From assembly GCF_006345805.1 (NCBI RefSeq), contig NW_021832498.1:1-32173 (forward strand): 32,173 bases of DNA. Direction: 5' to 3'. The position numbers and the translations under genes were made by a program. This document shows, in pieces, positions 1 to 32,173 of the stretch (within the stretch, counting starts at the first letter, position 1; each line of letters begins with the position of its first letter). The DNA is from Octopus sinensis. Its lineage: Eukaryota. The notes beneath the pieces were generated by a model. That model was not told the DNA's origin. It did not search any database and saw only the letters and a program-made list of their open reading frames with translations.

Positions 1-607
1 CCACCTTGGCTGCTACATTCCTGGCTGCTTTTTCACTTTTAAATTGCACTGTTATGGTTCCGTATTGTAATCCTTTTGTCATGTACACAATTTCCTCTCC
101 TGTCTGCTTGAGAGCCTCTTCAATTGCTTCCATGTTAATTACTTCCATCTTTTTCCCTCCATTCATAAAAACTTTATATTTAATGGTTCTACGATGGAAC
201 CAGTCTCCGCGCCCTACTGAGGGCAGCAGCTCAACCTCTCCGTTCTCGTTCTCTTTCACAAACTCCTGGAGGCCCGTCAACTTAGCCAGGTCTATCTCTC
301 TTTCCATTGACTTCTTCGTTACACCTGCGTAGGTGCCTTCCATCTTTTTCACCGCCAACTCCTCCTCAGATGTCGAAATTTCAGAGAAATTTCTCCCTTC
401 CATCTCCTCCGTTTGATGGAGGCGGCTCATAATCGCCTCAGACCGAAAAACGGCCTCCCGAACCGAAAAAGTTTAACGCGCTGAACGAGCGAAACGCGAA
501 ACCGCGTCAACGCCGTTCAGAGTTTCCACAACAACAACCACGCTTTTTTTTCTTTTTTACCGAATTTTCAGGAGCCGAAAAAAACACAACCGACGCCAAA
601 CGAAGTG
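1..607 (-). mobile_element. Unit A (5' part only) of the ORF1-only non-LTR-type element
   Basis: Aligns to the 5' portions of units B-D and is cut by the window edge. Confidence 0.85.
2..430 (-). CDS. N-terminal 143 codons of ORF1/Gag-like protein (MSRLHQTEEMEGRNFSEISTSEEELAVKKMEGTYAG...), open to the window edge
   Basis: Hand translation from the ATG at 430 is stop-free to position 2 and in frame with the ATG at 343. It is absent from the ORF track, probably because no stop lies in the window. Confidence 0.8.
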   Translation of the reverse strand, partial: MSRLHQTEEMEGRNFSEISTSEEELAVKKMEGTYAGVTKKSMEREIDLAKLTGLQEFVKENENGEVELLPSVGRGDWFHRRTIKYKVFMNGGKKMEVINMEAIEEALKQTGEEIVYMTKGLQYGTITVQFKSEKAARNVAAKV

Positions 608-619
608 CTAACGTTTCTG

Positions 620-2283
620 ATTTCTTTATTACCCACTAGGGGCTACATAGAGGGGACGTTACAAACATTGGGGACATGGAACATCACAATTACATATAAA
701 TGAGCAAAATGGAATATGAAAATGATATATGAGAGTGATACCGACGGCCCCATCCGCCAGCATCACTTATCTGTCCTTCTTCACCCAATTCCAATTAATA
801 TTCCCGTTTTTTCTATCACAACATTCGTTTTTCTTTTAGCCATCTCTATCCATTTCTCTTTCATTTCCACTGTCTTCCACCGCACACCCTCTTCCTCTAA
901 CCTTGTCGCCAATATACCCTTATCATCACTATCCACAGCCGTATAACTCCACTCTTCGTATTCGTACCACTTGGTTAACACCAGGTTTTTAACGTTTTGT
1001 ATGTCTTTCCCATGTACAACAAATAAAAAATGGGTCTTGGGACTTTCTTTGCTCTGTGTGTTTGTTTTGGATTTTCGTGTAGGCGGGGAGTGGGTGGAAT
1101 CACTGTTTGCCGGGGAGGGTTGGGACTCCAAGGGTATGGGTGGTGTCGGGGTGGGTTGGGGCTTCGCACAGTTTTTCTTTTTCCTTCTTTTTCTCTTTGT
1201 TCCCCCTTCTTTCCACTCTTGTTGCATCTCTTCTTCTGTCGTTTCCTTCTCTGTTTGTTTCTGTTTATTTTCTTCCTCTCCTGAGGCTTCCTCAACGCTT
1301 TCCTTTTCTTTTTCCTTTGGTGGGGGAGGGCAGTAGGCTCTTATGTGACCCCTTTGGCCACACTTGTAGCACCTGGGCGCCCTACCCTCCACCCACACTC
1401 TCATAATAATATTTCCAGTTTTTATGCTGTCCGTAATCCTCTCTATAACGTCCGCCTCCGTTTGAATGTTCATAACTAGTGTGGCACCTCTCACGCCTTC
1501 ATACTTCATAATGGCGTGGAGGATGTCCACTTTATCTTCATTTCCTTTTATTACCGCAGCCGTTATTACTTCGCCCTCTAGGTGTGGAGGTATTCCTTCC
1601 ACCCTAATTCTAGTTGTCCGCCTATTCAGATACGAGGGTAACAAGTAAAACTTTTCAGTACTCACCACCTTGGCTGCTACATTCCTGGCTGCTTTTTCAC
1701 TTTTAAATTGCACCGTTATGGTTCCGTATTGTAGTCCTTTTGTCATGTACACAATTTCCTCTCCTGTCTGCTTGAGAGCCTCTTCAATTGCTTCCATATT
1801 GATTACTTCCATCTTTCTCCCTCCATTCATAAAAACTTTATATTTAATGGTTCTACGATGGAACCAGTCTCCGCGCCCTACTGAGGGCAGCAGCTCAACC
1901 TCTCCGTTCTCGTTCTCCTTCACAAACTCCTGGAGGCCCGTCAACTTAGCCAGGTCTATCTCTCTTTCCATTGGCTTCTTCGTTACACCTGCGTAGGTGC
2001 CTTCCATCTTTTTCACACCAACTCAGATGCCAACCCTCCTCAGATGACGAAATTTCAGAGAAATTTCTCCCTTCCATCTCCTCCGTTTGATGGAGGCGGC
2101 TCATAATCGCCTCAGACCGAAAAACGGCCTCCCGAACCGAAAAAGTTCAACGCGCTGAACGAGCGAAACGCGAAACCGCGTCAACGCCGTTCAGAGTTTC
2201 CACAACAACAACCACGCTTTTTTTCTTTTTTACCGAATTTTCAGGAGCCGAAAAAAACACAACCGACGCCAAACGAAGTGGTG
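620..2283 (-). mobile_element. Unit B, full-length ORF1-only element (~1.66 kb)
   Basis: CpG-rich 5' UTR (~2105-2283), one long ORF, 161-nt 3' UTR ending ...GGGTAATAAAGAAAT. No ORF2. Confidence 0.85.
781..2007 (-). CDS. ORF1/Gag-like nucleic-acid-binding protein, 408 aa from the ATG at 2007: RRM-like core, CCHC zinc knuckle, K/E-rich and P/S/T-rich linker with KRKRRKKK, ~88-aa C-terminal domain
   Basis: Long ORF in the track (781-2016 from GTG). CYKCGQRGHIRAYC (1330-1371) is an exact CX2CX4HX4C preceded by RVWVEGRAPR, a context typical of L1/Tx1-clade ORF1 and ZCCHC3-like proteins. The ancestral N-terminus (ATG 2104) is frameshifted by a net 10-bp insertion. Confidence 0.85.
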   Translation of the reverse strand: MEGTYAGVTKKPMEREIDLAKLTGLQEFVKENENGEVELLPSVGRGDWFHRRTIKYKVFMNGGRKMEVINMEAIEEALKQTGEEIVYMTKGLQYGTITVQFKSEKAARNVAAKVVSTEKFYLLPSYLNRRTTRIRVEGIPPHLEGEVITAAVIKGNEDKVDILHAIMKYEGVRGATLVMNIQTEADVIERITDSIKTGNIIMRVWVEGRAPRCYKCGQRGHIRAYCPPPPKEKEKESVEEASGEEENKQKQTEKETTEEEMQQEWKEGGTKRKRRKKKNCAKPQPTPTPPIPLESQPSPANSDSTHSPPTRKSKTNTQSKESPKTHFLFVVHGKDIQNVKNLVLTKWYEYEEWSYTAVDSDDKGILATRLEEEGVRWKTVEMKEKWIEMAKRKTNVVIEKTGILIGIG

Positions 2284-2292
2284 ACGTTTCTG

Positions 2293-3952
2293 ATTTCTTT
2301 ATTACCCACTAGGGGCTACATAGAGGGGACGTTACAAACATTGGGGACATGGAACATCACAATTACATATAAATGAGCAAAATGGAATATGAAAATGATA
2401 TATGAGAGTGATACCGACGGCCCCATCCGCCAGCATCACTTATCTGTCCTTCTTCACCCAATTCCAATTAATATTCCCGTTTTTTCTATCACAACATTCG
2501 TTTTACTTTTAGCCATCTCTATCCATTTCTCTTTCATTTCCACTGTCTTCCACCGCACACCCTCTTCCTCTAACCTTGTCTCCAATATACCCTTATCATC
2601 ACTATCCACAGCCGTATAACTCCACTCTTCGTATTCGTACCACTTGGTCAACACCAGGTTTTTAACGTTTTTAACGTTTTGTATGTCTTTCTCATGTACA
2701 ACAAATAAAAAATGGGTCTTGGGACTTTCTTTGCTCTGTGTGTTTGTTTTGAATTTTCGTGTAGGCGGGGAGTGGGTGGAATCACTGTTTGCCGGGGAGG
2801 GTCGGGACTCCAAGGGTATGGGTGGTGTCGGGGTGGGTTGGGGCTTCGCACAGTTTTTCTTTTTCTTTTTTCTTTTTCTCTTTGTTCCCCCCTCCTTCCA
2901 CTCTTGTTGCATCTCTTCCTCTGTCGTTTCCTTCTCTGTCTGTTTATTTTCTTCCTCTCCTGAGGCTTCCTCAACGCTTTCCTTTTCTTTTTCCTTTGGT
3001 GGGGGAGGGCAGTAGGCTCTTATGTGACCCCTTTGGCCACACTTGTAGCACCTGGGCGCCCTACCCTCCACCCACACTCTCATAATAATGTTTCCAGTTT
3101 TTATGCTGTCCGTAATCCTCTCTATAACGTCCGCCTCCGTTTGAATGTTCATAACTAGTGTGGCACCTCTCACGCCTTCATACTTCATAATGGCGTGGAG
3201 GATGTCCACTTTATCTTCATTCCTTTTATTACCGCAGCCGTTATTACTTCGCCCTCTAGGTGTGGAGGTATTCCTTCCACCCTAATTCTAGTTGTCCGCC
3301 TATTCAGATACGAGGGTAACAAGTAAAACTTTTCAGTACTCACCACCTTGGCTGCTACATTCCTGGCTGCTTTTTCACTTTTAAATTGCACCGTTATGGT
3401 TCCGTATTGTAGTCCTTTTGTCATGTACACAATTTCCTCTCCTGTCTGCTTGAGAGCCTCTTCAATTGCTTCCATATTGATTACTTCCATCTTTCTCCCT
3501 CCATTCATAAAAACTTTATATTTAATGGTTCTACGATGGAACCAGTCTCCGCGCGCCCTACTGAGGGCAGCAGCTCAACCTCTCCGTTCTCGTTCTCCTT
3601 CACAAACTCCTGGAGGCCCGTCAACTTAGCCAGGTCTATCTCTCTTTCCATTGCTTCTTCGTTACACCTGCGTAGGTGCCTTCCATCTTTTTCACCGCCA
3701 ACTCCTCCTCAGATGACGAAATTTCAGAGAAATTTCTCCCTCCATCTCCTCCGTTTGATGGAGGCGGCTCATAATCGCCCTCAGACCGAAAAACGGCCTC
3801 CCGAACCGAAAAAGTTCAACGCGCTGAACGAGCGAAACGCGAAACCGCGTCAACGCCGTTCAGAGTTTCCACAACAACAACCACGCTTTTTTTCTTTTTT
3901 ACCGAATTTTCAGGAGCCGAAAAAAACACAACCGACGCCAAACGAAGTGGTG
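2293..3952 (-). mobile_element. Unit C, full-length ORF1-only element
   Basis: Aligns end to end with unit B. Confidence 0.85.
2454..3772 (-). pseudogene. Frameshifted ORF1 copy in unit C
   Basis: Versus units A/B: -1 near 3740, -1 near 3653, +2 near 3551, -1 near 3220, plus in-frame indels (9-bp KNV duplication near 2660). Some single-base indels could be assembly errors. Confidence 0.8.
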
Positions 3953-3961
3953 ACGTTTCTG

Positions 3962-5643
3962 ATTTCTTTATTTACCCACTAGGGGCCACATAGAGGGGAC
4001 GTTACAAACATTGGGGACATGGAACATCACAATTACATATATATGAGCAAAATGGAATATGAAAATGATATATGAGAGTGATACCGACGGCCCCATCCGC
4101 CAGCATCACTTATCTGTCCTTCTTCACCCATTTTCAATTAGCATTCCATTCTTTCCTATCACAACATTCGTTTTTCTTTCAGCCATCTCTATCCATTCCT
4201 CTTTCATTTCCACTGACTTCCACCGCACACCCTCTTCCTCTAACCTTGTCGCCAATATACCCGTATCATCACTATCCACAGCCGTATAACTCCAATCTTC
4301 GTGTTCGTACCACTTGGTCAACACCTGCTTTTTAACGTTTTGTATGTCTTTCCCATGTATAACACATAAAAAATGGGTCTGGGGACTTTCTTTGCTTTGT
4401 GTGTTTGTTTTGGATTTTCTTGTAGGAGGGGAGTGGGTGGAATCACTGTTTGCCGGGGAGGGTTGGGACTCCAAGGGTATGGGTGGTGTCGGGGTGGGTT
4501 GGGGCTTCGCACAGTTTTTCTTTTTCCTTCTTTTTCTCTTTGTTCCCCCTTCTTTCCACTCTTGTTGCATCTCTTCTTCTGTCGTTTCCTTCTCTGTTTG
4601 TTTCTGTTTATTTCTCTTCCTCTCTGGGGCTTCCTCAACGCTTTCCTTCTTTTTTTCTTTTTCCTTTGGTGGGGGAGGGCAGTAGGCTCTTATGTGACCC
4701 CTTTGGCCACACTTGTAGCACCTGGGCGCCCTACCCTCCACCCACACTTCATAATAATATTTCCAGTTTTTATGCTGTCCGTAATCCTCTCTATAACATC
4801 CGCCTCCGTTTGAATGTTCATAACTAGTGTGGCACCTCTCACGCCTTCATACTTCATAATGGCGTGGAGGATGTCCACTTTATCTTCGTTTCCTTTTATA
4901 ACCGCAGCCGTTATTAATTCGCCCTCTAGGTGTGGAGGTATTCCTTCCACCCTAATTCTAGTTGTCCGCCTATTCAGATACGAGGGTAACAAGTAAAACT
5001 TTTCAGTACTCACCACCTTGGCTGCTACATTCCTGGCTGCTTTTTCACTTTTAAATTGCACCGTTATGGTTCCGTATTGTAATCCTTTTGTCATGTACAC
5101 AATTTCCTCTCCTGTCTGCTTGAGAGCCTCTTCAATTGCTTCCATGTTAATTACTTCCATCTTTCTCCCTCCATTCATAAAAACTTTATATTTAATGGTT
5201 CTACGATGGAACCAGTCTTCCGCGCGCTCTCCTGACTGAGGCAGCAGCTCCACCTCTCTCCGTTTTCGTCCTCCTTCACAACTCCTGGAGGCCCGTCAAC
5301 TTAGCCAGGTCTGTCTATCTCTCTTTCCATTGACTTCTTCGTTACACCTGCGTAGGTGCCTTCCATCTTTTTCACCGCCAACTCCTCCTCAGATGACGAT
5401 ACTTCCGTCGAAATTTCAGAGAAATTTCTCCCTTCCATCTCCTCCGTTTGATGGAGGCGGCTCATAATCGCCTCAGACCGAAAAACGGCCTCCCGAACCG
5501 AAAAAGTTTAACGCGCTGAACGAGCGAAACGCGAAACCGCGTCAACGCCGTTCAGAGTTTCCACAACAACAACCACGCTTTTTTTCTTTTTTACCGAATT
5601 TTCAGGAGCCGAAAAAAACACAACCGACGTCAACGAAGTGGTG
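3962..5643 (-). mobile_element. Unit D, full-length ORF1-only element (5'-most, outer end of the array)
   Basis: Aligns end to end with unit B; homology ends at about 5643-5652. Confidence 0.85.
4124..5465 (-). pseudogene. Frameshifted ORF1 copy in unit D
   Basis: -1 indel near 4748 splits ORFs 4124-4747 and 4690-5253; several indels at 5218-5320; in-frame 12-bp insertion near 5400. Confidence 0.8.
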
Positions 5644-5666
5644 CCGTTTCTGCCAGCTCGCTGTCT
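5644..5666 (-). other. Remnant of a tRNA-derived SINE head (A-box region), presumed insertion target at the outer array end
   Basis: Minus strand reads AGACAGCGAGCTGGCAGAAACGG. TGGCAGAA matches the head of the degenerate SINE at 19761, and AGAAACG matches the junction spacers and 32111-32125. Confidence 0.6.
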
Positions 5667-6207
5667 TCGTGAAGCTATAAACAGTAGCAGGTAAATATCC
5701 GGTTGAAAAACGCTTTGAGATAAAAAGTTGGAGGCTCCCGTAGACAAGAGAGTCGTTCTAAAGTTGGACCAAAGCATTTCCGTCCATTTTCAAAGCTTTA
5801 TTCTTACCGGCGAGAATTGTTTGTTGTTGATGTCATAGGAATTTATAAACTTTTGAGAAAACGTGAAATAATTATTTGTTTTTGAACAATGGATCTCGAA
5901 GCACGTAAAGCAATAAATACGTGTTTCGAGTCCCACTGTTCCAGAAAGAATTGTTTTATGATCTCTCGAGAGTTTATACATTTTTATGACGTCAACGTGA
6001 GAATTATTTTCGCTTTCACTTTTAGCGAATAGGAAAACTAGTGCTCACGAATCTTTATAGAGGCTCCGAAACTGGAACGCTCATGGGATAGAGCAAGGTG
6101 TCCTTAATTTGGGGACTTGGGCCGAATGCTTGCAACAGAGCGGATCTTGCTAAAGGTACCCAAGGACCAGGGGATGTTAAACAGAGCGACGGATTCAATC
6201 TAGTAAA

Positions 6208-6300
6208 TTCTTCTTCTTCTTCTTCTTTTTCTTCTTCTTCTTCTTCTTCTTCTTCTTCTTCTTCTTCTTCTTCTTCTTCTTCTTCTTCTTCTTCTTCTTC
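6208..6300. repeat. (TTC)n microsatellite, ~31 units
   Basis: Direct reading. Confidence 0.97.
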
Positions 6301-6315
6301 TTTATATGTGTGTGT

Positions 6316-6716
6316 CTCTCTTTTTATCTCTTTTATCTCTTTTACTTGTTTCACTCATTTGACTGTGGCCATGCTGGAGCACCGCCTTTAGTCGAGCAAA
6401 TCGACCCCAGGACTTATTCTTTGGAAGCCTAGTACTTATTCTATCGGTCTCTTTTTATCGAACCGCTAAGTTACAGGGACGTAAACACACCAGTATCGGT
6501 TGTCAAATGATGTAGGGGGACGGGACAAACACAGACATACAAACATATATACACATATATATACGACGGGCTTCTTTCAGTTTCCCTCTACCAAATCTAC
6601 TCTCAAGGTTTTGGTCGGCTCGTGGCTATAGGAGAAGACACTTCCCAAGGTGCCATGCAGTGGGAATGAACCCGGAACCATGTGGTTCGTAAGCAAGCTA
6701 CTTACTATACAGCCAC
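6316..6716 (-). mobile_element. tRNA-derived SINE, family S1 (CORE-like CCTTGGGAAGTG motif, internal microsatellite, (GAGATAAAA)n-type tail)
   Basis: Homologous to copies at 14790, 15606, 27545, 28440 and 31190; B-box-like GGTTCATTCC on the minus strand. Confidence 0.85.
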
Positions 6717-19760: not shown

Positions 19761-19868
19761 GTGGCAGAATCTGTAGCGATACTAGTTACATACCTTTACG
19801 CTCTGAGTTCGAATTCAGGAACAGAACGATTTTATCTTTTACGTTTTCGGCCAAATAAAAATAAATCC
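19761..19868 (+). mobile_element. Highly degenerate SINE of the same head family as 31757-32173
   Basis: GTGGCAGAATCTGTAGC ... TTTACGCTCTGAGTTCGAATTC matches the CTACGTTCTGAGTTCAAAT head segment at ~32070. Confidence 0.5.
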
Positions 19869-19951
19869 GCTTGAAGTTCTTTTCTACAGGGTGTTGTCTT
19901 GTAATCTAATGGTCGATGTTATAGATTGCTAAAAGATAACTGTCGTCAATA

Positions 19952-23513: not shown

Positions 23514-23584
23514 CTACAGATATTATAGTCAGCACTGATTTCTTTAGAAAATTTGTAGCGATGACCTTAACACGTGAATTATGT

Positions 23585-23729
23585 GCACTGCTAATACAGT
23601 ACTGCACTTCTAACACAGTACTGCACTACTAACACAGTACTGCACTGCTAACACAGAACTCCACTGCTAACGCAGTACTGCACAGCTAACACAGTACTGC
23701 ACTGCTAACACAGTACTGCACTGCTAACA
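23585..23729. repeat. 19-bp minisatellite (CTAACACAGTACTGCACTG) x ~7.5
   Basis: Units start at 23591, 23610, 23629, 23648, 23667, 23686, 23705 and 23724. Confidence 0.95.
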
Positions 23730-31690: not shown

Positions 31691-31756
31691 CGAAAAATAA
31701 AAAAAATATAGACGCAACGATATGACTGAGAGAAGTAAAAGAACACACATAAACAT

Positions 31757-32173
31757 ATTTTCTACTCTGGGCACAAGCCCTGAAATTTTTGGCAAGGGAG
31801 CCAATCGATTAGATCGACTCCAGTACACAACTGGTACTTAGTTATCGACCCCAAAGGATGAAAGGCAAAATCGACCTCGACGGAATTTGAAATCAGAACA
31901 CAAAGAGAGAGGAAATACCTATTTCTGTACTACCCACAAGGGGCTAAACACAGAGAGGACAAACAAGGACAGACAAAGGGATTAAGTCGATTATATCAAC
32001 CCCAGTGCGTAACTGTTACTTATTTAATCGACCCCGAAAGGATGAAAGGCAAAGTCGACCTCAGCGGTATTTGAACTCAGAACGTAGCTTGTTGTGTGTG
32101 GTGTGTGTGTGTGCTAACGTTTCTTATTTCTTTATTGCCCACATGGGGCTAAACATAGAGGGGACAACAAGGA
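31757..32173 (-). mobile_element. Nested head-to-tail chain of tRNA-derived SINEs with a Meta/MESC-like central domain
   Basis: Two copies of GTTCTGA(G/T)TTCAAAT..GAGGTCGA(C/T)TTTGCCTTTCATCCTTT(C)GGGGTCGAT, and two copies of the tail ..AGCCCC..GTGGG..A(A/G)TA(A/C)AGAAAT (ending at 32126 and 31921), each directly followed by SINE-head sequence. Confidence 0.85.

What the first reader, a model, noticed from the sequence alone, without database searches (positions are those of the whole stretch)
602..5666. Array junctions look like repeated site-specific insertions into a SINE/tRNA A-box
Seen (minus strand): junction 1 is tail|CAGAAACGTTAG|CACTTCG (608-619); junctions 2 and 3 are tail|CAGAAACGT|CACCACTTCG (2284-2292, 3953-3961); the outer end is AGCGAGCTGG|CAGAAACGG|CACCACTTCG (5644-5666). 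The spacer therefore varies from 9 to 12 bp and continues upstream into a TGGCAGAA A-box-like head. The same AGAAACGTTAGCAC follows the SINE tail at 32111-32125, and TGGCAGAATC starts the degenerate SINE at 19761. Known: target-primed reverse transcription gives variable TSDs, and Tx1-clade elements target multicopy RNA genes and microsatellites. Inference: the endonuclease cuts the head of an abundant SINE and regenerates the target each time, so the array grows by serial insertion. This would be a retroelement that parasitises SINEs and probably disables their Pol III promoter.
Basis: partly seen in the sequence, partly recalled or inferred. Interest (0 to 1): 0.85.

Follow-up and report, generated by a model that had tools for sequence, protein, structure and literature searches.

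The report
ORF1-only retroelement array in SINE head
A 1.67-kb retroelement that carries only a LINE-type ORF1 gene sits as a head-to-tail array inside the promoter end of an octopus SINE, at the same nucleotide where a distant relative is inserted in another octopus species, so it looks like a target-specific retrotransposon of a known general kind with an unusual target.

Summary
All four junctions hold a 15-mer of constant length (CAGAAACG-TTAG/TCAC/GCAC-CAC) differing by 2-3 substitutions.

The repeat unit (1669-1691 bp, 96-99% identical) is a half-LINE: 5' UTR, one ORF1 (two RRM-like folds plus a CCHC knuckle), a 3' tail shared with a local SINE, and no endonuclease or RT gene.

The 15-mer is SINE head sequence, not part of the element. 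The array's outer flank continues into the upstream SINE head.

In Octopus sinensis, a solo copy only about 66% identical, at a non-orthologous locus, splits an otherwise complete SINE at the same TGG^CAGAA position. It has a 19-bp target-site duplication, and the joined flanks rebuild an intact SINE. A SINE tail at 32126 abuts the same position.

Site-specific insertion into the A-box-like head is therefore well supported.

Array growth by serial insertion is plausible. R1 arrays in Drosophila rDNA are an exact precedent, and a weak deficit of nonsynonymous differences between U3 and U1/U2 hints at separate source copies. It cannot be separated from unequal exchange, and U1/U2 look like a local duplication.

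Tx1 membership is untested.

The parts
1..619 (-). Unit U0, cut by the window edge. It holds the 5' 619 nt of a unit: the 15-mer, the 5' UTR, and the start of ORF1, whose reading frame is intact from the ATG.
   Evidence: Alignment of units; translation from the ATG.
620..2292 (-). Unit U1, 1673 bp. It runs from CAGAAACGTCACCAC+TTCG to GGGTAATAAAGAAAT.
   Evidence: It is 99.0% identical to U2.
781..2016 (-). The longest open ORF1 (411 aa from a GTG). It has two RRM-like domains plus a CCHC zinc knuckle, then a disordered K/E/P-rich tail.
   Evidence: ORF list. Pfam zf-CCHC E 0.0012, below the cut-off. AF2 model with pLDDT >90 over about residues 30-230. Foldseek top hits are tandem-RRM proteins. 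269 homologs were found, and the closest are Octopus proteins.
2293..3961 (-). Unit U2, 1669 bp. ORF1 is broken by several private 1-bp deletions.
3962..5652 (-). Unit U3, 1691 bp. It is the outermost (5'-most) unit and the most divergent (96%), with many private indels.
605..619 (-). Junction 15-mer J1, CAGAAACGTTAGCAC. It is identical to the SINE head consensus from the insertion point on.
2278..2292 (-). Junction 15-mer J2, CAGAAACGTCACCAC.
3947..3961 (-). Junction 15-mer J3, CAGAAACGTCACCAC, identical to J2.
5638..5652 (-). Outer 15-mer CAGAAACGGCACCAC, at the 5' end of U3. It is the left copy of the duplicated target.
5653..5690 (-). Upstream part of the interrupted SINE head (..GCTTCACGAAGACAGCGAGCTGG), ending at the insertion point TGG^CAGAA.
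   Evidence: It aligns with the 5' parts of intact SINE heads from O. sinensis.
620..660 (-). 3' tail of the unit (GTCCCCTCTATGTAGCCCCTAGTGGGTAATAAAGAAAT). It is homologous to the SINE tail. The same tail lies at 2293-2333 and 3962-4003.
   Evidence: BLAST of U1 1636-1673 against window 32165-32126 (87.5%) and against the L001 SINE tail at 6124-6163 (85%).
32126..32173 (-). 3' tail of a SINE (cut by the window edge) that ends in AATAAAGAAAT.
32111..32125 (-). AAGAAACGTTAGCAC, the head of the next SINE, starting at the same position (within 1 nt) directly after that tail. It looks like a SINE-into-SINE insertion at the same site.
31749..32110 (-). Rest of the target SINE, whose interior is replaced by (AC)n, followed by a third, 5'-truncated SINE.
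19761..19880 (+). Degenerate SINE copy that begins with GTGGCAGAATC.

Best explanation
The unit is a non-autonomous, ORF1-only derivative of an APE-type LINE (a half-LINE). It shares its last 40 or so nucleotides with a local SINE that has A-box-like and B-box-like motifs. A partner LINE acting in trans integrates it by target-primed reverse transcription at one fixed position of that SINE's head. The bottom strand is nicked between TGG and CAGAA, inside the A-box-like motif TGGCAGAAWCG. The top strand is cut 9-19 nt downstream, which duplicates CAGAAWCGTTAGCAC(GCCG).

Because the duplication recreates the cleavage site next to the resident copy, the same SINE can be hit again. This gives head-to-tail units separated by the duplicated piece of target. 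The array seen here most likely combines at least two such insertions (U3 versus the rest) with at least one local duplication by unequal exchange (U1/U2).

Shown:
- the anatomy of the unit;
- the SINE origin of the 15-mer and of the outer flank;
- an independent insertion at the same nucleotide, with a TSD, in a second species.

Inferred:
- the nicking specificity and which protein provides it;
- the order and number of insertion events;
- loss of Pol III promoter function in the interrupted SINE.
For: 1. Unit anatomy. There are four units 96-99% identical, each running from CAGAAACG..CAC+TTCG to AATAAAGAAAT, with one ORF and no second ORF.

2. ORF1 identity. The ORF has a CCHC knuckle and two RRM-like folds. 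A distant homolog (27% identity) lies directly upstream of Exo_endo_phos and RVT_1 genes. That RT is closest to human L1 ORF2p among solved structures (1.7e-35, against 6.7e-15 for R2).

3. O. sinensis solo copy. L001 reads ..GAGCTGG|CAGAAACGTTAGCACGCCG|element of 1598 bp ending AAATAAAGAAAT|CAGAAATGTTAGCACGCCG|GGCGAAATGC.. followed by the rest of the SINE. The joined flanks align colinearly with four intact SINE copies.

4. Independence of the two insertions. The elements are only about 66% identical, and the two loci share nothing but scattered repeats.

5. The window's outer flank aligns with the upstream SINE head.

6. In 53 kb, every tail ending exactly in AATAAAGAAAT is followed by (C/A)AGAAAYGTTAGCAC. 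That is 3 independent cases and 5 junctions. The 14-mer occurs far above chance.

7. Hint of separate sources. Differences between U3 and U1 are 29 nonsynonymous of 47, against 34.5 +/- 2.9 in spectrum-matched neutral simulations (P 0.044). For U3 versus U2 the figures are 34 of 55 against 40.3 +/- 3.2 (P 0.038).

8. Precedent. R1 arrays in Drosophila rDNA have units separated by the 14-bp TSD and are attributed to reinsertion into the TSD (PMC2718515). Double insertion followed by unequal exchange is documented (PMC5932611). Tx1-clade LINEs target other transposons (PMC4494074). L1-Tx1 families were recently active in O. vulgaris (PMC13282606).
Against: - Only two half-LINE insertions and one SINE junction could be examined. 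No genome-wide census was possible.
- The far (3') end of the array lies outside the window, so the downstream remainder of the SINE was not seen at this locus.
- All junctions have the same length and the same 5' end, and J2 equals J3. This is what amplification of one event would give.
- The 5'-most unit, U3, carries the most private changes. The R1-type model of reinsertion at the 5' TSD predicts that this unit is the youngest.
- Other copies of the tail-sharing SINE sit at unrelated sites, including a TSD-bounded dimer at an AT-rich site in L001 (18014/18244). The machinery is therefore not strictly head-specific, or several partner LINEs are involved.
- The selection signal is weak (P about 0.04), and the two tests are not independent.
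- ARAGORN and Rfam do not recognise the SINE head as a tRNA, so the A-box call rests on motif resemblance alone.
Confidence: 0.7

Rival explanations
1. There was a single site-specific insertion. The whole array was then built at the DNA level, by unequal exchange or replication slippage between the two 15-19 bp TSD copies and later between whole units. No serial insertion took place.
For: The predicted structure is identical: unit plus one TSD copy. All junctions have equal length and the same 5' end. J2 equals J3, and U1/U2 are 99% identical and adjacent. D. melanogaster R1 tandems with identical junctions are interpreted in this way (PMC2718515, PMC5932611).
Against: There is a weak deficit of nonsynonymous differences between U3 and U1/U2, which in situ neutral divergence does not predict. 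J1 differs from J2 and J3 at two adjacent-but-one positions while matching the SINE consensus exactly. A first exchange between repeats of only 15 bp is inefficient.
Confidence: 0.3
2. The 15-mer belongs to the element itself, as a terminal redundancy or as read-through past the AATAAA signal into the next unit. On this reading there is no target specificity, and the array is just a tandem duplication whose phase makes it look like a spacer.
For: Within the window, the 15-mer is an invariant-length part of every unit. It also follows a related tail at 32111-32125.
Against: Intact SINE copies carry the same 15-mer in continuity with GGCGAGCTGG upstream and GCCGGGCGAAATGC downstream. In O. sinensis the sequence after the tail runs on through the whole SINE, and the 19 bp before the element repeat it. 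The window's outer flank is also SINE head beyond the unit boundary.
Confidence: 0.04
3. The SINE sequences were attached at the RNA level, by 5' transduction from a source copy lying in a SINE or by template switching of the RT onto SINE RNA. Precise homing could also be helped by a co-transcribed downstream SINE sequence that anneals to nicked SINE DNA. On this reading a sequence-specific endonuclease is not needed.
For: Co-transcription with the target is known to sharpen integration of R1/R2-type elements (cited in PMC4494074). The partner machinery also places the SINE at non-SINE sites.
Against: The direct 19-bp repeat and the seamless empty site in O. sinensis are the signature of integration into a pre-existing SINE. 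The junction lies at least 22 nt inside the conserved SINE 5' region, not at an RNA 5' end. Two elements 66% identical share the 3' junction but differ in the 5' junction, which fits a fixed first nick and a variable second nick.
Confidence: 0.1

Closest known systems
R1 tandem arrays at the 28S rDNA site in Drosophila (Stage & Eickbush 2009, PMC2718515; Roiha et al. 1981 as cited in PMC5932611)
   Same: Both are site-specific non-LTR elements found head-to-tail at their normal target. Units are separated by a piece of target the length of the TSD. Both are explained by reinsertion into the duplicated target, with later amplification by unequal exchange.
   Different: The target here is an interspersed SINE head, not an rRNA gene. 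The element is ORF1-only and must be mobilised in trans. The 5'-most unit is not obviously the youngest.
Target-specific Tx1-clade LINEs (Tx1L in Tx1D, Tx1-Mar in Mariner-N4_AMi, Keno in U2 snRNA genes; Kojima 2015, PMC4494074)
   Same: Both are LINE-type elements that home into one position of another repeated element or small-RNA gene. A dependent SINE shares the target preference. L1-Tx1 families are present and recently active in Octopus (PMC13282606). The ORF1 carries a CCHC knuckle.
   Different: Clade membership is untested, because the element has no RT. In the sources I read, listed Tx1 targets are DNA transposons, LTR elements, snRNA and 5S genes, satellites and microsatellites, not a SINE head. 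Here the target is the very SINE family that shares the element's tail.
HAL1 (half-L1) of mammals (Bao & Jurka 2010, as cited in PMC5753468)
   Same: Both are non-autonomous LINE derivatives that keep only ORF1 between the LINE UTRs.
   Different: The lineage and ORF1 type differ (RRM+CCHC here). HAL1 is dispersed, not site-specific, and does not form arrays at a target.
Double insertion as the seed of TE-derived satellites (McGurk & Barbash 2018, PMC5932611)
   Same: Tandem junctions contain the TSD, and dimers can expand by unequal exchange.
   Different: That evidence came from population data and from distinct 5' truncations. Here there is a single array with uniform 5' ends.

Membership tests
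Target-specific non-LTR retrotransposon | Independent copies are integrated at the same nucleotide of the same target sequence. | tested here: met
   The window array and the O. sinensis solo copy (about 66% identical, non-orthologous loci) both follow ..GCTGG and are followed by CAGAAAYGTTAGCAC. A SINE tail at 32126 abuts the same position within 1 nt. The sample is only n=3.
Target-specific non-LTR retrotransposon | There is a target-site duplication, and the target is restored when the insert is removed. | tested here: met
   L001 has a 19-bp TSD with one CpG-to-TpG difference. The joined flanks align colinearly with intact SINEs. At the window locus only the 5' side is visible.
Target-specific non-LTR retrotransposon | A large share of all genomic copies (>20% in Kojima's criterion, PMC4494074) is flanked by the same target. 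| not testable with these tools
   No cephalopod genome can be searched. DNA pattern scans of the three collections gave 0 hits.
Target-specific non-LTR retrotransposon | The element encodes its own endonuclease and reverse transcriptase. | tested here: not met
   There is only one ORF per 1.67-kb unit, and the same holds for the 1.6-kb O. sinensis copy. The element is therefore non-autonomous.
Tx1 clade | The RT domain is placed within Tx1 by phylogeny. | not testable with these tools
   The element has no RT. A distant ORF1 relative is linked to APE and an RT closest to L1 ORF2p. That places the wider ORF1 family with L1-like APE LINEs but does not separate L1 from Tx1.
LINE ORF1p with RRM plus CCHC | RRM fold(s) followed by a CCHC zinc knuckle. 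| tested here: met
   The CCHC is at residues 215-230, with Pfam E 0.0012, just under the cut-off. C216 and C219 are nearly invariant in homologs. The AF2 model has two confident alpha/beta domains, and Foldseek matches tandem-RRM proteins at E about 1e-4.
Half-LINE (HAL1-like) | ORF1 only, between LINE-type 5' and 3' ends, with a 3' end shared with an autonomous partner. | tested here: inconclusive
   The ORF1-only structure is met in two species. The tail is shared with a SINE. The autonomous partner was not found, because no genome was available.
R1-type tandem array by reinsertion into the TSD | Units lie at the normal target site and are separated by a piece of target the length of the TSD. 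| tested here: met
   Three internal junctions of 15 nt are SINE head sequence, and the outer flank is SINE head.
R1-type tandem array by reinsertion into the TSD | There are signs of separate events, such as different 5' truncations, different TSDs, or units tracing to different source lineages. | tested here: inconclusive
   The 5' ends are uniform and J2 equals J3, while J1 differs at 2 positions. There is a weak nonsynonymous deficit between U3 and U1/U2, P about 0.04.
tRNA-derived SINE (SINE2) | The head is homologous to a tRNA and carries internal A and B boxes. | tested here: inconclusive
   The motifs TGGCAGAAWCG and GAGTTCAAATTCC, about 50 nt apart, resemble the A-box and B-box consensus (my own knowledge of TRGCNNAGTGG and GGTTCGANNCC). 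ARAGORN and Rfam find no tRNA.

The most novel reading that the evidence does not exclude
The autonomous partner LINE has an endonuclease aimed at the promoter head of the very SINE family that borrows its 3' tail. LINE, half-LINE and SINE would then all home into SINE heads. Each hit would silence a SINE competitor, give the newcomer a harmless landing site, and recreate the target. SINE heads would become seeds of tandem arrays and new satellites in octopus genomes.
Probability: 0.25. Interest if true: 0.7.

Novelty: new variant of a known kind. Interest (0 to 1): 0.5.

Why it matters
Target-specific LINEs are known for rDNA, snRNA and 5S genes, microsatellites and a few DNA transposons. A family that homes into the Pol III promoter region of a SINE sharing its own tail would be a case of one retroelement parasitising, and probably inactivating, another that depends on the same machinery.

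It would also give a concrete and testable route from an interspersed repeat to a tandem array in octopus genomes, where about two thirds of the DNA is repeats and SINEs and LINEs each make up more than 10% (PMC13282606).

On the practical side, the ORF1 homologs carry misleading gene names in public octopus annotations.

Tried and rejected
- **More octopus loci.** Exact look-ups of the window ORF (GTG and ATG starts) found nothing on record.
- **Profile searches.** Only P0001's locus could therefore be fetched.
- **L002 and L003.** The loci reached through P0155 and P0016 are unrelated full LINEs without the octopus SINE. They serve only to show that this ORF1 family belongs to APE/RT LINEs.
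- **DNA pattern scans.** Scans for the tail-head junction and for the SINE head in metagenome, prokaryote-genome and viral collections gave 0 hits.
- **tRNA origin of the SINE head.** ARAGORN and Rfam gave no tRNA match.
- **Orthology of the two loci.** Rejected. Only scattered, non-colinear repeat matches were found.
- **Age gradient along the array.** The four-unit tree is ((U1,U2),(U0,U3)) with no simple gradient, so the direction of growth could not be read.
- **Sequence search of ORF1 against PDB.** It found only the CCHC knuckle.
- **Whole-window repeat finder.** The output was swamped by microsatellites.


Full report
**What is in the sequence**

Positions 1-5652 of the window form a head-to-tail array on the minus strand. 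It has one unit cut by the window edge (U0, 1-619) and three complete units:
- U1, 620-2292;
- U2, 2293-3961;
- U3, 3962-5652.

The complete units are 1669-1691 bp long. U1 and U2 are 99.0% identical. U3 is 96% identical to both, and U0 is 97-98% identical to the others.

The claim of a 9 to 12 bp spacer does not hold. Between the tail ..AATAAAGAAAT and the conserved TTCG, every junction is 15 nt long:
- J1, 605-619: CAGAAACGTTAGCAC;
- J2 and J3, 2278-2292 and 3947-3961: CAGAAACGTCACCAC;
- outer, 5638-5652: CAGAAACGGCACCAC.

The 9 versus 12 reading requires CAC or CACCAC to be counted as element sequence. Two to three substitutions explain the data equally well. The 15-mer is among the more variable stretches, but 36 of 640 windows of the same size are as variable. 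The motif is far above chance: 4 matches against 0.17 expected.

**What the unit is**

Each unit holds a 190-nt leader, one ORF, about 190 nt of 3' UTR, and a tail ending in AATAAAGAAAT.
- The ORF is open for 411 codons in U1 (781-2016).
- It is in frame from the true ATG in U0.
- It is broken by private indels in U2 and U3.

The protein has a CCHC knuckle. In an AlphaFold model with pLDDT above 90 over residues 30-230, it has two alpha/beta domains whose best PDB matches are tandem-RRM proteins such as raver1, SFPQ/NONO and HuD.

An exhaustive HMMER scan finds 269 relatives. The closest are unnamed or misnamed proteins of Octopus sinensis, O. vulgaris and O. bimaculoides. A distant relative (27% identity) lies directly upstream of Exo_endo_phos and RVT_1 genes. 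That RT is nearest to human L1 ORF2p among solved structures.

The unit has no second ORF. It is therefore a half-LINE, comparable in architecture to mammalian HAL1 (PMC5753468), and must be mobilised in trans.

Its last 40 or so nucleotides are homologous to the tail of a local SINE.

**What the 15-mer is**

It is SINE head sequence. Intact copies of the SINE in O. sinensis read ..CACAAGGTGGCGAGCTGG CAGAATCGTTAGCAC GCCGGGCGAAATGC...

The window's outer flank (5653 to about 5690, minus strand: GCTTCACGAAGACAGCGAGCTGG) aligns with the part of the head upstream of the 15-mer. The array therefore sits inside a SINE head.

The break lies inside TGGCAGAAWCG, which resembles the Pol III A-box consensus. 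A B-box-like GAGTTCAAATTCC follows about 50 nt downstream. ARAGORN and Rfam do not call a tRNA there, so the tRNA origin rests on motif resemblance only.

**The decisive outside evidence**

The only close database relative of the ORF, P0001 (46% identity), led to a 20.7-kb stretch of O. sinensis chromosome CM016880.1 (L001). A solo 1598-bp element of the same architecture lies there, about 66% identical in the ORF and 72% in the 3' region. It interrupts an otherwise complete SINE:

..GGCGTTGAGCTGG | CAGAAACGTTAGCACGCCG | TGTTTGACACTTCG...AAATAAAGAAAT | CAGAAATGTTAGCACGCCG | GGCGAAATGCTTAGC...

The 19-bp direct repeat differs only by one CpG-to-TpG change. Joining the two flanks gives a sequence that aligns colinearly with four intact SINE copies.

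The two loci are not orthologous. They share only scattered, non-colinear repeats.

Two elements that have diverged to 66% identity were therefore integrated independently at the same nucleotide of the same SINE head, in the same orientation. The 3' junction is fixed and the 5' junction varies (TSD of 19 nt versus 9-15 nt). Target-primed reverse transcription with a fixed first nick and a flexible second nick gives this pattern, as described for R1 and R2 (PMC2718515).

A third case lies in the window itself. The SINE tail at 32126-32136 is followed directly by AAGAAACGTTAGCAC and the body of another SINE.

Within the 53 kb available, every tail that ends exactly in AATAAAGAAAT is followed by this head fragment. 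SINE copies with variant tails are not.

**Limits of the specificity claim**

- The sample is three independent junctions, and two of the loci were chosen because they contain the element.
- The tail-sharing SINE also occurs at unrelated sites. One example is a dimer bounded by a repeated AT-rich flank at L001 18014/18244.
- So either the partner's endonuclease only prefers this site, or more than one partner LINE is involved.
- The array's far end is outside the window.

**How the array arose**

Two mechanisms give the same structure.

*Serial insertion.* The TSD recreates the site next to the resident copy, and the SINE is hit again. This is the accepted explanation for R1 arrays whose units are separated by the 14-bp 28S TSD (PMC2718515). 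It is one route to TE tandems in Drosophila (PMC5932611).

*Unequal exchange.* One insertion, or a dimer, is amplified by unequal exchange. This is how D. melanogaster R1 tandems with identical junctions are read (PMC2718515, PMC5932611).

The evidence here is mixed.
- The equal junction lengths, the uniform 5' ends, J2 being identical to J3, and the 99% identity of the neighbours U1 and U2 all speak for at least one local duplication.
- Differences between U3 and U1/U2 in the ORF show fewer nonsynonymous changes than neutral simulations matched for mutation spectrum and CpG context. The counts are 29 of 47 against 34.5 +/- 2.9 (P 0.044), and 34 of 55 against 40.3 +/- 3.2 (P 0.038).
- That deficit hints that part of this divergence arose in transposing lineages, which would mean U3 and the others came from different source copies. 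The signal is weak and the two tests overlap.
- The four-unit comparison gives ((U1,U2),(U0,U3)) with no age gradient.
- The 5'-most unit carries the most private lesions. This does not fit simple R1-type growth at the 5' TSD.

I therefore rate "at least two insertions plus local duplication" as somewhat more likely than "one insertion plus unequal exchange". I do not regard either as shown.

**Consequences for the SINE (inference)**

The left copy keeps the A-box-like motif but is separated from the B-box-like motif by at least 1.6 kb. It is followed within 35 nt by a T7 run at the element's 5' end. The right copy lacks everything upstream of CAGAA. Normal Pol III transcription of the interrupted SINE is therefore unlikely.

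The CACTTCG...T7 motif at the element's 5' end is conserved between the two species' elements despite 66% overall identity.

**Comparison with known systems**

- The closest functional analogue is R1 in rDNA: the same array structure and the same proposed mechanism.
- The closest family candidates are the target-specific Tx1-clade LINEs, which home into other transposons and small-RNA genes (PMC4494074). L1-Tx1 families are recently active in O. vulgaris (PMC13282606). Tx1 membership cannot be tested without an RT.
- The architecture is HAL1-like.

In the literature I could search, a SINE head is not among the listed targets of site-specific LINEs. The coincidence that the target SINE shares the element's tail is also not described there. 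I classify the finding as a new variant of a known kind, of moderate interest, pending a genome-wide census.

Noticed in passing
window 5600-5637, 3910-3946, 2241-2277, 568-604 (minus strand); L001 9458-9482: The element's 5' end keeps CACTTCG followed within 3-20 nt by a run of seven T in both species, although the elements are only about 66% identical. This is a Pol III terminator-like run placed right behind the split SINE head.
   Followed up: partly
window 31749-32173 (minus strand): Three SINEs lie in a row. The middle one has its interior replaced by (AC)n. Its variant tail (GTACAGAAATAGG) abuts a third SINE truncated at ..TATTTC, which is a different position from the TGG^CAGAA site.
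   Followed up: partly
L001 18014-18400: This is a SINE dimer in which both copies are preceded by ATATTTTATCTKAWTAAGG. It looks like a TSD-bounded double insertion or duplication at an AT-rich non-SINE site. It shows that the tail-sharing SINE is not strictly head-specific.
   Followed up: partly
window 6208-6302 and 6340-6600: A (TTC) run of about 32 copies directly abuts a copy of a different, abundant SINE family. The same SINE recurs at several places in the window and in L001.
   Followed up: no
window 23584-23729: A 19-bp minisatellite (TGCACTGCTAACACAGTAC) with 7.7 copies and 90% matches.
   Followed up: no
proteins P0003, P0019 (public records CAI9742213.1, XP_052828248.1): Homologs of this ORF1 carry misleading names in public octopus annotations: 'EPM2A-interacting 1-like' and 'ABC transporter F family member 4-like'.
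   Followed up: no
protein P0073 (1135 aa, MetaClust): An ORF1-like stretch (residues 477-657) lies in a predicted protein that also has Helitron_like_N and PIF1 helicase domains. This is probably a gene-model fusion of neighbouring transposons.
   Followed up: no
L001 4227-8046: Three copies of a repeat of about 790 bp (two of full length, one of about 390 bp). Each full copy matches its own reverse complement at about 89-92% identity, and the copies match each other at 86-91%. They lie upstream of the solo element in O. sinensis.
   Followed up: no
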